Part shown: one piece after another, positions 2,674 through 33,800 of the stretch
How positions within the stretch are numbered: the stretch's first letter is position 1
How the letters are laid out: every line of letters begins with the position of its first letter
Position numbers and translations under genes: made by a program
Source: Podarcis muralis
Taxonomy: Eukaryota
DNA length: 64,000 bases
Direction: 5' to 3'
Assembly (NCBI RefSeq): GCF_964188315.1
Contig: NC_135659.1
Span: 72,726,001 to 72,790,000 of the forward strand
The notes under the pieces: generated by a model
Told to the model about the DNA's origin: nothing
Databases searched by the model: none
The model's input: only the letters and a program-made list of their open reading frames with translations

Positions 2674-22335
<19,662 letters not shown>

Positions 22336-23799: not shown

Positions 23800-23933
23800 N
23801 NNNNNNNNNNNNNNNNNNNNNNNNNNNNNNNNNNNNNNNNNNNNNNNNNNNNNNNNNNNNNNNNNNNNNNNNNNNNNNNNNNNNNNNNNNNNNNNNNNNN
23901 NNNNNNNNNNNNNNNNNNNNNNNNNNNNNNNNN
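23800..23933. other. Assembly gap (134 N)
   Basis: Run of n characters. Confidence 1.
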
Positions 23934-27800: not shown

Positions 27801-30800
27801 ACCCAGAAATAGTGCTTCAGGTTAAGAACTTTGCTTCAGGATAAGAACAGAAATCAGGCTCCGGCTGCGCAGCAGCAGCAGGAGACCCCATTAGCTAAAG
27901 TGGTGCTTCAGGTTAAGCACAGTTTTAGGTTAAGAACGGACCTCCGGAACGAATTAAGTACTTAACCCGAGGTACGACTGTATCTGCTAATAGTCAAAAA
28001 GACATTTGCAGTGAGGCCAAGGAGGTTAAAATTTGAAAAACCTATTCCCTAATGTATACAACTCTCAAACTCTCGATGAGTAAGGACTTTCCCTTCATGT
28101 GAAGAAAGCTGCAGCAGATTGAGTCAATAGTGTGTCCCACAGTCAAGATGGCAGTTACTGCACGTGCTGTAGAGGAAAGTGAGGGGCAGATGGGGCTCAT
28201 CAACCTGGGAAGGTAGTCCATCTAAGAGAAGGAAAACTCTGGTCCTAAATCTCCACTGCCTTGTGGGACATCTTCGGAGAAGAAAAGGCTAAGGAGCAAA
28301 CCCTACACAAATCCAGAGTGAAGTCCCTAAGGTGGTGGGATGGCACCTTGTACGCCTCCTTCCGGTCAGCTACTCCTGCAGCCAAGCTGATGCCAAACGT
28401 ATTACTCTGCTTTTCTTTGGACCACATCAAGGCAGAGAAGGAGGATCTTGTCATCTGGGCAGCCCAGGACCTCCATACATACGGCCCAGGCTTGTTCCCT
28501 GGGGAGGTTACTTTGGTGCTCGGTTTGACTTCACCCCCAGAGGTGCAGTGCACTGTTTCTTGAGACAGATGGATGCCAGCAACAACTCTATTCCGAAGAT
28601 ACTTCAAATACTATAAAGATGCATTTTTAGAGAGGATGATACAAAAAACATAGGTTGAAATGTGACTGTAAGCTGATCTTCCTTTATGGTCACCGGTTGA
28701 TTATAAATCTTGGTACAAGTGCATTTAAAACTGCATTTCAGTCCTTTGCACAGAAATGACAATAGCAAGAAAGAATCTGTTGAGCAGCAACGTAGTACAT
28801 TTGAAACCTGTCTACGTCCCATCAAAATGAATGGAATTGCACTAAAGTTGTCAGTATCCCAATTTCCACTGCAGATTGCTGTTTACGTTGAGTTTAATCT
28901 TAAGAGTTCCACAAGAATCTGCATGCAGTTCTTAATGAGTGAAGTTTAGTGCTTCTGATGATGCGAGTTAGTGATTCAAGTTTATTGAGTGCTAAAAGGA
29001 ATTTTTTGCTATAAAGGAGAATTGCTATTCCTTAATTTGCAAGTCTCTTTTAAGAGGCATAATAGATTAGGGTCATCTCTGGTGTAACATACAGTGTAAA
29101 TAATGGAGCATAACTTAATATGACTGGGATGTTGAGGCTTCTGTTTTCCCTGCTTACTGAAATGTTCAGATTCATAATATTGCAAAGAAGATGCTAAATT
29201 TTATTATCATCTCTTTAGAAGTTATCTTTTTACCTCTGGATAGATAATGCTCTGGTAATAAATACCATTAATTTTTAGCTCAGTTGGAATTTATAACAAG
29301 AACAATTTTGCTATACATGCTTTGGAAATGACTTGTAAAAAAATTCAGTGCCTGAAAACTTCATTGTAACAGAACACTATAGTTATTCTCACAATTACCT
29401 GATTCAGATGGTCAAAATGACTTACTGCCACCTGACACTTAAATGCCCAGAAACAACACTCTGCCCAGGCGGTATATGAACAGATCTATTTCAGTGTTGG
29501 CCTGCGTCATATGTTAATTTAACTTGTGATGCTGAAAATAGGTGAAGTTGCATAGGGTTAGGCAACAAACTGGGCTGCTCTTTGTAGAATAGCATCATAG
29601 GATTCTTTGAAAAGATGGTTTTTAGAAGATAATGTAACTCATCCTGGCAGAAACAGTGCAGTGGCTCTACCATAACACTTGACCTACAGTTTGAATGTTT
29701 TACAGTGGAAAGCAGCTCAAATTCCAGCATTCACAGAGGGCAGCCAGATGAGGGAAATTTCTAAATGTAGGCTTTGTTTACTTCTTGAAAAGGTTTTACA
29801 AACTGCAGTTGGCTGGAGCTGTATTCCTGCTCAGTATAATTCCTGTTTAAGGTTTTAAACGATAAATTCATTTAATTAGGAACTTTCAGTGGGCAGTGGA
29901 AAATTGTAACTGTTGCATCTTAATTTTAATGGTATAATGACATTTCCTTTGCTATAGATGTTTAGCTCTTAAAATTAAAAACGGACACCTGATTGCATAC
30001 TATTTAATGTGAATAGTCTTGTATAGCCATTTTAGTTTTGTAACTGGCTATAATTCTGCTTGAGTACCAATTACTACATCAGTTCAAACTGCCCCAAACT
30101 CATCTGCTTCCATGTGTACCAGGCAGCCTAGTTTCTTGTATCTTGTTCAGTATGCCTGCTTGCATTTTCCAGTTCTCCGCTATGATAACATGCTAGAGTG
30201 AACTAGAAAATCTACACCTATGCAGAGGATTGCCTCCTTTTTTATATATACAATACAATAAAAGAAACTAGTAAAAGTAAAGGTACCCCTGCCCGTATGG
30301 GCCAGTTTTGTCAGACTCTAGGGTTGTGCGCTCATCTCACTCTAGAGGCCGGGAGCCGGCGCTGTCCACAGAGACTTCCGGGTCACGTGGCCAGCGTGAC
30401 ATAGCTGCTCTGGCAAGCCTGCACCAGCGCAGCACCCGGAACGCCGTTTACCTTCCCGCTATAAAGCGGTACCTATTTATCTACTTGCACTTAAGGGTGC
30501 TTTTGAACTGCTAGGTGGGCAGGAGCTGGGACTGAAAGACGGGAGCTCACCCCGCCGTGGGGATTCAAACCGCCGACCATACGATCGGCAAATCCTAGGC
30601 ACTGAGGTTTTACCCACAGCGCCACCCGCGACCTATTAAAAGAAACTAATCTAAATAAAAACAAAAACAGAGAAAGAAAGAGAAAACATAGTCATAAGTC
30701 TTGCTTGATTACTGTATTTTCCGGTGTATAAGATGACTGGATGTATAAGACGACCCCCAACTTTTCCAATTAAAATACAGAGTTTGTGATATACTCGCAA

Positions 30801-33800
30801 TATAAGACTACCCCTCTTCCAACGCACACCAAATAAAAAATAGAAAAACCAGTCTCCAGTCTGGCTCGGAAATCCGCTCACTTCCCAGTGGCCGGGGGGG
30901 GGGGGGCGCGGGCGGGTCCGTTTAAACAGAGGAGCGAGCCGGAGGGCTTCCTCTTTGGCTCGCTTCCTCAATCGCTATGACGTCGCTGAACTTTGGTCTG
31001 TTATTCCTTTTGTCAGACCTGCTGAAGCATTTTGGGGGGATTTTTTACTGCTTTTGTTGAGCCGCTCTCGTGGAATTTGCTTGGGACGTGGAACAGCAGA
31101 CAGGCGCCATTTCAACCCAGGGTGGCTGGGGGAAAAGCCTTTATTAGACGCCCCAATCAATTGGCAGTGGGTGAGTCCATCGCTGTGCATGGGGAGCAGG
31201 GCATTTGAGGGGAGTGCTCCCTCAATTGCCGCTCTCGCTTTACAACTTTGCCGCCCTCGTGGCGAAAAAGCTTCCGGGTTTCTCTGTTCCCAGCCACCTC
31301 CCCCTCTCTGCTTCCCCTGCCCAAACTGCTCCCTTCGTCGTTGCCCTCGCGGCTTGATAATCGGCTTCCCTCCCCTCCCCCAGCCATTTTCTACCTTTGC
31401 TTGCCCCTTCGGCTGTGCCACGCTCCGCTGCGCTTAGTGCTGTTGTTGGTTCCCTGCCTTTCCTTTTCTTTTACTGCGGGGGCTGCTTGGGCTGAGGCAG
31501 TGGCCACATGTCTAGTTGCTGGGGCAACACGAGGCCACCATTTTGGACCACATGGTCTACTACCGAGAGCGGTTAGGGTCATTCTGTTGCTGGTGATTGG
31601 GGAGGCTTCTGGGGCCAATTTCCAAGTGTATTTCTGCTTCATCTAGAGAGCTTGGTGTCCTCCGATTTAATTTGCTGTCGTTTTTTTCTTTGGTGGGGAG
31701 TTGCTGCAGGAGCTGCTGCTGTAGCTGGCGTAGAAGACGACCCCCGACTTTTGAGAAGATATTCCTGGGTTAAAAAGTAGTCTTATATGCCAGAAAATAC
31801 AGTACTTGAACATGCTTATCTCCTTTCATAGCATCCTCTGAAGAAGTGCAGGAATGTAGGGGGGTGGTGTGAAATTTCCAATGCTGACAAACAAAATTGA
31901 AGTGCCCCCGCCAAGCTGAGTTTTAATTGACACCAAGAAATGGGAAATCCTCATTGCCTCACTTTTTCCTTGAGGAGAAGGTGCCCTAGGGGTGGTTCTC
32001 CTGCAGCTACTTATGCCTGCCCTGTACCAAATGTCCTTGCTTACTCAGAGTGTTCTCTTCTCTTTCCTGCCCCCAAAGTATCTTAGATGGTGGTCATATA
32101 AAGTGTTTCCATTTCTTACATAGTGACTAAGACAATACATCCAGATTTTATGCATTTCTTGTGTTCATTTTACTTTACATTCTTTTGTAGTTTGAATAAT
32201 TCTTTGAGCCTTCTCTCTCATTACCTGCTAGTCTACCATATTAGAAAGATTGAATGAAGGTTTATTTGCCAACAAGCCTGTCCATGCCTTGTGTGCTAAG
32301 CATCTAAGCTTCTAGTACTTGGCTGTAGATCCTGCAGTTTGATACTGAGTAGACAAACAACTCAGCAACAAAATTGATTTGCTTAGAGAAAGACACCTAT
32401 TGGTAACAAAAGTTAATTAAACTGGGAACACAAAAGATGCGAGAGGCATAATTGGTAGCATAAATTTTAAGTGGTTTTATGTTCTGAACATCATGTTTGT
32501 AGAAACAGTTTTAGATGCACATTGTATATCAATCATCATTTGTCTTGTTTTTGTCCAGCTGCACTTCAAGCCCTAAAACGAAAGAAGAGGTATGAGAAGC
32601 AGCTTGCACAAATCGATGGCACATTATCGACAATCGAATTCCAGAGGGAAGCGCTGGAAAATGCCAACACCAACACTGAAGTGCTCAAGAATATGGGATT
32701 TGCTGCCAAAGCAATGAAAGCTGCTCACGACAACATGTAAGATGCTCTTCATCATTGGTTCATTGAATGGGCCAACTTTTCACTGAGTGCAGTACAAAGG
32801 GACACATTCACTCTTTGCCCATATTCCCTCTTTTTTGGATAGTTCTGGACAGTTATTATAAACCAGTCTGCACACAGTAATTCAAATTCTACATTGTGCA
32901 GCGGGACTTGTTTCTATAAAAGTATGTACAGATGTGTATAAGCTTTCAAGTAACTGATCATGCTCAGTATCATTACATGTAGACATGCTTTATCTGTAAG
33001 CAGCATATAGTTTGAAAAGTATGTGGCTTTCATGGTTAAAGTCTTTGAATTTTACTTCCAGATTATTATGCAACTGAATAGATGCAAACAATTTATTAGA
33101 GCAACCAGTTATTACTGTTACAATTTTTATTTAAATTAGTCTGAATTCTTGCTCAGGAAATAATGATTTCAAAGGAAGAAGTGTGTTTTAAATCAGCAGT
33201 ATTGTTTTCTTGATGATTTGAGTCAGTTTGCCCTGGTGGTTAGCTGAATATTTCCTTAAAGCTATTGAGACTTGTAATGATCTCCAAGACTAAACAGGTG
33301 AATGGTTCAAGTAACTTAAATCCTTTTCCTACAGGGATATTGACAAAGTAGATGAACTAATGCAAGACATTGCAGAACAGCAGGAGTTAGCAGAAGAAAT
33401 TTCAACAGCTATCTCCAAGCCTGTGGGAATCGGTGAAGAATTTGATGAGGTAAGTACCAAACAGTTTAAGACAAGTATGAGGTTTGTACACATACAAACT
33501 TAAGGATTTTGAAACACACTCACTTCTTGTGACTCAAAATATTACGACTCATTATTTTTCCATCTTAAATAACAACAGAAATGTGAGTTTAATACAGTGG
33601 TACCTCGCAAGACGAATGCCTCGCAAGACAAAAAACTCGCTAGACGAAAGGGTTTTTTGTTTTTTGAGCTGCTTCGCAAGACGATTTTCCCTATGGGCTT
33701 GCTTCGCAAGACGGAAACGTCTTGCAAGTTTGTTTCCTTTTTCTTAACACCGTTAATACAGTTGCGACTTGACTTCGAGGAGCAACTCATAGAACGCGGT

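What the first reader, a model, noticed from the sequence alone, without database searches (positions are those of the whole stretch)
30712..31802. Pack-type Tc1/mariner element carrying about 870 bp of CpG-island-like cargo inside CHMP4B intron 1
Seen: TA target duplication, ~27-bp TIRs and subterminal AAGAC(G/T)ACCCC repeats at both ends. They enclose a GC/CpG-rich interior (about 30860-31730) unlike the surrounding AT-rich intron. The interior contains a poly-G/GC box (30893-30915), a CRE-like TGACGTCG (30978-30985), TGGAACAGC (31089-31097, ZNF341-like), a GTGAGT donor-like site (31171), long pyrimidine tracts and a (CTG)n stretch, and has no transposase ORF. Known: plant Pack-MULEs and Pack-TYPE elements capture GC-rich host gene 5' fragments; this is much less described for vertebrate Tc1/mariner MITEs. 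Inference: a captured host promoter/first-intron fragment, possibly chimeric, being mobilised as a portable CpG island. Retained CpGs imply a young or unmethylated insertion.
Basis: partly seen in the sequence, partly recalled or inferred. Interest (0 to 1): 0.7.

Follow-up and report, generated by a model that had tools for sequence, protein, structure and literature searches.

The report
Transposase-less lizard transposon with GC-rich filler
A 1.1-kb cut-and-paste transposon without its own enzyme gene sits in the first intron of a wall lizard's CHMP4B gene and carries about 0.9 kb of GC-rich non-coding DNA between composite transposon ends, but whether that DNA was picked up from a host gene's promoter could not be tested here.

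Summary
Window 30712-31802 is a TA-flanked element with 27-29-nt terminal inverted repeats that chance does not explain. It has repeated TATAAGAC(G/T)ACCCC motifs, no coding capacity and a GC-rich interior, and it lies in CHMP4B intron 1.

The ends are composite. 30712-30780 reads as a complete 69-bp miniature element with its own right terminus. A second left-end-like site follows. The right end is a copy lacking its first ~31 nt. A 23-nt direct repeat brackets the interior.

Only the first two thirds of the interior are CpG-island-like (observed/expected 0.80 and 0.64; last third 0.36). A neighbouring young SINE scores 0.81, so CpG retention fits youth as well as protection from methylation.

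No parent copy or second copy lies in the 64-kb window.

The decisive tests could not be run: copy number, parent locus, empty sites, expression. Blank protein searches are uninformative, because close lizard relatives seem absent from those collections.

Verdict: a real composite non-autonomous Tc1/mariner-type element. Capture of a host promoter is unproven.

The scan noted similar "CpG cargo" transposons elsewhere in this genome (s1-189849, s1-179051, s1-189841), with mixed follow-up outcomes.

The parts
30710..30711 (.). TA flanking the left end (target-site duplication, left copy)
   Evidence: TA directly outside both termini
30712..30738 (+). left terminal inverted repeat (CTGTATTTTCCGGTGTATAAGATGACT)
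   Evidence: pairs with 31776-31802; 0 matches expected by chance
30743..30765 (+). 23-nt subterminal repeat, copy 1 (contains the TATAAGACGACCCC motif)
   Evidence: 91% identical direct copy at 31730-31752
30766..30780 (+). internal right-terminus-like sequence (CCAATTAAAATACAG; compare CCAGAAAATACAG at the true right end). It makes 30712-30780 a complete 69-bp miniature element
   Evidence: the 9-mer AAAATACAG has 5 hits in the window, 3 of them in this element, with 0.94 expected in 128 kb of both strands
30785..30814 (+). second left-end-like site (inner repeat): 21 of 27 positions match the reverse complement of the right TIR, and the inner 12 nt are identical
   Evidence: alignment; pair I7 (30800-30811 / 31777-31788, 100% complementary)
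30815..31729 (.). interior ('cargo'): non-coding, GC 55%, CpG observed/expected 0.58 (0.80, 0.64 and 0.36 by thirds of 30860-31730)
   Evidence: composition; no coding signal; no RNA family, no tRNA; no similar sequence elsewhere in the window
30894..30906 (+). G13 homopolymer followed by a GC box
31730..31752 (+). 23-nt subterminal repeat, copy 2, in direct orientation
31776..31802 (-). right terminal inverted repeat
31803..31804 (.). TA flanking the right end (target-site duplication, right copy)

Best explanation
A transposase-less cut-and-paste DNA transposon of the TA-targeting (Tc1/mariner/pogo) kind. It is built as a miniature element (30712-30780), then an inner end-like site, then about 0.92 kb of GC-rich non-coding filler, then a second right end lacking its first ~31 nt (31730-31802).

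Inferred history: in an ancestral copy at another locus the filler became joined to the ends. This happened either by template switching during repair of an excision gap, with the 23-nt direct repeat marking the overlap, or because the transposase skipped the miniature element's own right end and used a more distant one (end bypass). The whole 1.09-kb unit then inserted at a TA in CHMP4B intron 1, mobilised in trans by a related autonomous element.

The filler is most likely passenger DNA with no function at this site. Its CpG content reflects a GC-rich origin and moderate youth rather than a working CpG island.

Shown: the ends, the composite build, the composition and the lack of coding. Inferred: movement as one unit, how the filler was joined, and the lack of function.
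For: TIRs and flanking TA are beyond chance.

The internal right terminus and the second end-like site make the left end composite. The right end carries a direct copy of the left subterminal repeat. This asymmetry is not expected of a simple deletion derivative.

The GC shift coincides with the TE ends.

There is no other copy of this family in 64 kb. Two independent insertions 1 kb apart, in the right order and orientation, are therefore improbable.

The interior has no transposase remnant.

Animal TIR elements carrying foreign DNA, and the gap-filling, end-bypass and template-switch models, are described in PMC8277862.
Against: No second copy was seen, so movement as a unit is inferred only from a 2-bp TA, which any Tc1/mariner insertion has.

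The two bases after the internal right terminus are AG, not the TA expected if a complete miniature element had once inserted there.

The outer part of the second end-like site is strongly diverged. It may be a normal inner transposase-binding repeat of the family rather than a relic of a second copy.

The family consensus is unknown.
Confidence: 0.5

Rival explanations
1. Ordinary member of a multi-copy non-autonomous family. The whole 1.09 kb, interior included, is the family's invariant consensus, possibly derived from non-coding parts of an autonomous element, and no host parent copy is traceable.
For: This is the common outcome for such elements. An earlier follow-up in this genome reached that verdict for a hAT element with similar 'cargo' (s1-189841; unchecked here). 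The three TATAAGAC motifs on the left could be a normal array of binding sites.
Against: Autonomous Tc1/mariner elements have short non-coding regions, yet 0.9 kb here shows no coding remnant. The asymmetric right end and the internal right terminus point to a rearranged chimera.
Confidence: 0.2
2. One reading: a Pack-type capture of a host gene's promoter/first-exon/intron start, which still behaves as an unmethylated, portable CpG island and may supply a cryptic start site in the same orientation as CHMP4B.
For: The first 290 bp of the interior have CpG observed/expected 0.80, close to the 0.84-0.88 of the real promoter islands in the window. A GC box, a CRE-like site and a good splice-donor match lie in promoter-to-exon order on the + strand. 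Multicopy Pack-TIRs in animals tend to carry GC-rich DNA, and one frog case carries a 5'UTR (PMC8277862).
Against: No parent was found within 30 kb either side. No coding first exon is present: the ATG at 30978 opens only 27 codons (sequence). Each motif occurs once. Observed/expected falls to 0.36 in the last third. A neighbouring SINE has 0.81 merely from youth. TIR mismatches look like CpG decay, which implies methylation at this site. No expression or methylation data could be obtained.
Confidence: 0.15
3. Juxtaposition in place. A 69-bp miniature element (30712-30780) and a 5'-truncated copy (31730-31802) inserted independently, and the DNA between them is resident intron sequence or an older element. 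Nothing was ever carried.
For: 30712-30780 has both termini. A TA on each outer side is expected for any two Tc1/mariner insertions. Cut-and-paste elements often hop locally (general knowledge).
Against: The family has no other copy in 64 kb, so two hits 1 kb apart in matching order and orientation are unlikely. The GC/CpG-rich block is bounded by the ends, and the flanks are CpG-poor (0.07 in 31803-32550). AG rather than TA follows the internal terminus.
Confidence: 0.12

Closest known systems
Pack-TIRs of animals (Tan et al. 2021, Nat Commun 12:4280, PMC8277862) and plant Pack-MULEs / Pack-TYPE elements
   Same: A TIR element with TE sequence on both sides of an internal non-transposase segment. 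The carried DNA is GC-rich, as reported for multicopy Pack-TIRs. The composite ends and repeat at the breakpoints fit template switching or end bypass.
   Different: The defining parent copy outside any TE was not found and could not be searched for genome-wide. More than half of animal Pack-TIRs have the parent within 15 kb; here none lies within 30 kb. No captured exon was recognised.
Non-autonomous Tc1/mariner/pogo elements with unrelated interiors (MITE-like families, for example the Mariner-N and Tigger-derived families of vertebrates)
   Same: TA flanks, short TIRs, repeated subterminal motifs, no transposase, about 1 kb in size.
   Different: The family consensus and the autonomous partner are unknown. 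The TIR starts CTGTA rather than the usual CAGT/CAGG. The right end lacks an inverted inner repeat and instead carries a direct copy of the left one.
Composite 'miniature element + low-copy promoter-like DNA + second end' hAT elements noted by this scan in the same genome (s1-179051, s1-152869), and the Tigger-type element with 0.95 kb of CpG-rich cargo (s1-189849)
   Same: The same three-part build and the same cargo size and composition, in the same genome.
   Different: Those are AI notes on other DNA, and I could not compare the sequences. The hAT cases belong to another superfamily. Whether s1-189849 is the same family is unknown.

Membership tests
Tc1/mariner/pogo-superfamily non-autonomous element | TA target-site duplication | tested here: met
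   TA lies directly outside both termini. A 2-bp duplication carries little information on its own.
Tc1/mariner/pogo-superfamily non-autonomous element | terminal inverted repeats | tested here: met
   27-29 nt, 83% complementary. The 22-nt core has 0 chance matches.
Tc1/mariner/pogo-superfamily non-autonomous element | an autonomous relative with a DDE/D transposase sharing these ends | not testable with these tools
   No lizard genome or repeat library is searchable here. There is no transposase remnant in the element.
Tc1/mariner/pogo-superfamily non-autonomous element | further copies at other TA sites | tested here: inconclusive
   None in the 64-kb window. Scans of the metagenome, prokaryote-genome and viral collections gave only chance hits or nothing. 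The host genome itself could not be searched.
Pack-TIR / Pack-type element | TE sequence on both sides of the internal segment | tested here: met
   Left 103 nt and right 73 nt carry the TIRs and shared repeats.
Pack-TIR / Pack-type element | internal segment is non-TE host DNA | tested here: inconclusive
   No transposase, Pfam, Rfam or tRNA signal, and no similarity to other repeats in the window. Absence of a TE signature is not proof of host origin.
Pack-TIR / Pack-type element | a parent copy elsewhere that is not flanked by TEs | not testable with these tools
   No parent within the window. Genome-wide search was impossible.
CpG island | at least 500 bp with GC at least 55% and CpG observed/expected at least 0.65 | tested here: met
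   Met only marginally. The 500-bp windows starting at 30801 and 30901 give GC 0.55-0.57 and observed/expected 0.67-0.69. The whole interior gives 0.59 and the last third 0.36.
CpG island | unmethylated in the germline / acts as a promoter | not testable with these tools
   No methylation or RNA data could be reached.

The most novel reading that the evidence does not exclude
A Tc1/mariner-type Pack element in a reptile that picked up a working promoter-type CpG island and spreads it. Copies such as this one would stay unmethylated and seed new transcription start sites inside host genes; here that would be a cryptic first exon (about 30920-31170, donor at 31171) in the sense orientation 1.4 kb upstream of CHMP4B exon 2.
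Probability: 0.06. Interest if true: 0.65.

Novelty: new member of a known kind. Interest (0 to 1): 0.3.

Why it matters
If the interior proved to be a captured host promoter that has moved to several sites, this would be one of few vertebrate examples of a Tc1/mariner-type Pack element. It would also be a natural test of whether a CpG island keeps its unmethylated state when transplanted. As it stands, it is a well-delimited composite non-autonomous transposon in an intron of a housekeeping gene. It is useful for repeat annotation of lacertid genomes. It also adds one more instance of a recurring three-part build in this genome: miniature element, then about 0.9 kb of GC-rich DNA, then a second end.

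Tried and rejected
I did not resend a trimmed stretch, so read laying could not be used.
- Word-based protein searches with the 160-aa interior ORF and with the left-end ORF found nothing. The full phmmer search of 1.84 billion representatives with the interior ORF found nothing.
- These blanks are uninformative. The exon-2 ORF search returned many vertebrate contigs, but none shared the intron-coded part, so close lacertid relatives seem absent from the collection.
- Pfam on seven ORFs: nothing. Rfam: only one sub-threshold match outside the element. tRNA scan: nothing.
- A metagenome scan with the degenerate TIR gave four microbial chance hits. Scans of genome contigs and viral contigs with the 22-nt repeat gave none.
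- A paper search for the repeat as text gave only unrelated primers.
- Two other AAAATACAG sites in the window (14132, 62135) are chance matches.
- The end segments do not fold better than shuffles.
- A simple IR-DR (Sleeping Beauty-like) reading was rejected because the right end has no inverted inner repeat.
- A source among the three promoter islands of the window was rejected.
Only the exon-2 ORF was used, by reference.
Full report
**What is there**

Window 30712-31802 (1,091 bp) is bounded by inverted arms 30710-30738 and 31776-31804. The arms are 29 nt long and 83% complementary, and each includes a flanking TA. The 22-nt core of the left arm, allowing up to 3 mismatches, matches only itself and its inverted partner in 64 kb. 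None of 100 dinucleotide-preserving shuffles gave a match.

The motif TATAAGACGACCCC recurs at 30744, 30801 and 31731, against 0.2 expected. Weaker versions lie inside both TIRs.

CHMP4B is on the + strand. The exon 1 coding sequence runs through about 24.6-24.7 kb and exon 2 is 32561-32737. The element therefore lies in intron 1, 0.76 kb upstream of exon 2.

The right-end copy of the subterminal motif is in direct, not inverted, orientation. It belongs to a 23-nt direct repeat, 30743-30765 and 31730-31752, 91% identical, that brackets the interior.

Just after the left copy comes CCAATTAAAATACAG (30766-30780). This resembles the true right terminus, CCAGAAAATACAG. The 9-mer AAAATACAG has five hits in the window on both strands. 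Three are in this element, against 0.94 expected for the whole window. The other two, at 14132 and 62135, are unrelated. So 30712-30780 reads as a complete 69-bp miniature element.

Four bases later, 30785-30811 aligns to the reverse complement of the right TIR at 21 of 27 positions. The inner 12 nt are identical (pair I7).

The right end, 31730-31802, equals such a miniature element without its first ~31 nt. The build is therefore:
- a miniature element;
- an inner end-like site;
- about 0.92 kb of other DNA (30815-31729);
- a second right end.

A symmetric IR-DR structure is not present, because the right side has no inverted inner repeat.

**The interior**

GC is 55-56% and CpG observed/expected is 0.58-0.59. 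The rest of intron 1 has 0.27. The three real promoter islands of the window have 0.84-0.88. By thirds the interior values are 0.80, 0.64 and 0.36, so only about 30860-31440 is island-like. Takai-Jones-type thresholds are met marginally for the 500-bp windows starting at 30801 and 30901.

The Squam1-type SINE next door (about 30268-30632, - strand) has 0.81 (SINE name from PMC10058329). Young repeats in this intron therefore keep their CpGs without being islands.

At one aligned TIR position the left arm has TG where the right arm has CA. The other left-arm and right-arm TIR differences include CCGG/CTGG and GACGAC/GATGAC. These are CpG-decay-type changes. They suggest, as inference only, that the ends have been methylated.

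The named motifs (G13 and GC box, TGACGTCG, TGGAACAGC, GTGAGT) are all at the stated places, but each occurs once. The ATG at 30978 opens only 27 codons (sequence).

No ORF has a Pfam match. No RNA family or tRNA is found. TRF finds only a 2.6-copy 12-mer at 31697-31727.

**Search for relatives**

Nothing else in the window resembles the ends or the interior, and that includes the three promoter islands.

Protein-level detours found nothing. A control search with the exon-2 ORF returned 655 vertebrate ORFs. Among the 13 I aligned, chosen from the best-scoring hits and those covering most of the query, none shares the intron-coded part. Close lacertid relatives thus appear to be missing from those collections, and the blanks mean nothing.

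Pattern scans of the metagenome, prokaryote-genome and viral collections gave only chance hits or none.

Only the exon-2 ORF was searched, by reference.

**Explanation**

Best supported (0.5): a transposase-less TA-targeting TIR transposon that carries filler DNA joined to miniature-element ends in an ancestral copy, and that then inserted here as one unit.

Two mechanisms described for animal Pack-TIRs fit (PMC8277862):
- Template switching during gap repair. The duplicated 23-nt repeat would mark where the two repair tracts overlapped.
- End bypass. The transposase would have ignored the miniature element's own right end and used a distal one.

Against a clean end-bypass story, AG and not TA follows the internal terminus.

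One-unit movement is favoured over two independent insertions for two reasons. The family has no other copy in 64 kb, and the GC/CpG block stops at the ends: the right flank 31803-32550 has observed/expected 0.07. It is not shown, however, because a 2-bp TA proves little.

Rivals:
- an ordinary multi-copy family with an invariant interior (0.2);
- juxtaposition in place around resident DNA (0.12).

**Comparison and novelty**

Vertebrate Pack-TIRs are known. Tan et al. report 370 in 100 animal genomes, with multicopy cases in frog and alligator that favour GC-rich DNA, one of them a 5'UTR.

This element meets the structural criteria, but the defining parent copy was not testable. More than half of animal Pack-TIRs have the parent within 15 kb. 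No parent is seen here within 30 kb.

Earlier notes of this scan describe the same three-part build in hAT elements (s1-179051, s1-152869) and a Tigger-type element with 0.95 kb of CpG-rich cargo (s1-189849), all in this genome. Follow-up verdicts ranged from 'moved as a unit, source not found' to 'ordinary large family'. They are unchecked leads, and I could not compare the sequences.

I file this as a new member of a known kind and score interest at 0.3.

Noticed in passing
window 30268-30632 (- strand): A tRNA-derived SINE, Squam1-like by its GTAAAGGTACCCCTGCCCGT... body, with its head about 80 bp from the element's left end. Its CpG observed/expected is 0.81, so it is probably young. ARAGORN does not call a tRNA in it.
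   Followed up: partly
window 30827-30840 and 31682-31695: A 14-nt inverted repeat (CACCAAATAAAAAA / TTTTTTCTTTGGTG, 13 of 14 complementary) brackets the GC-rich core inside the element. It equals or beats 12 of 1000 shuffles and 5 of 994 real-sequence pairs. It is A-rich, so possibly chance; possibly the ends of a nested unit.
   Followed up: partly
window 1064, 2477, 4736, 16107, 30894, 37335, 50278, 50881, 62845: Nine G or C homopolymer runs of 10-15 nt in 64 kb. This is more than expected for 44% GC, and no similarity around them was shared in BLAST.
   Followed up: no
window 23800-23933: A run of 134 N directly upstream of the CHMP4B promoter island and exon 1.
   Followed up: no
window 14130-14142: TACTGTATTTTGG, an 11-nt match to the TA plus TIR start, sits about 100 bp upstream of a ZNF341 zinc-finger exon. 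There is no further similarity, so I judged it chance.
   Followed up: yes
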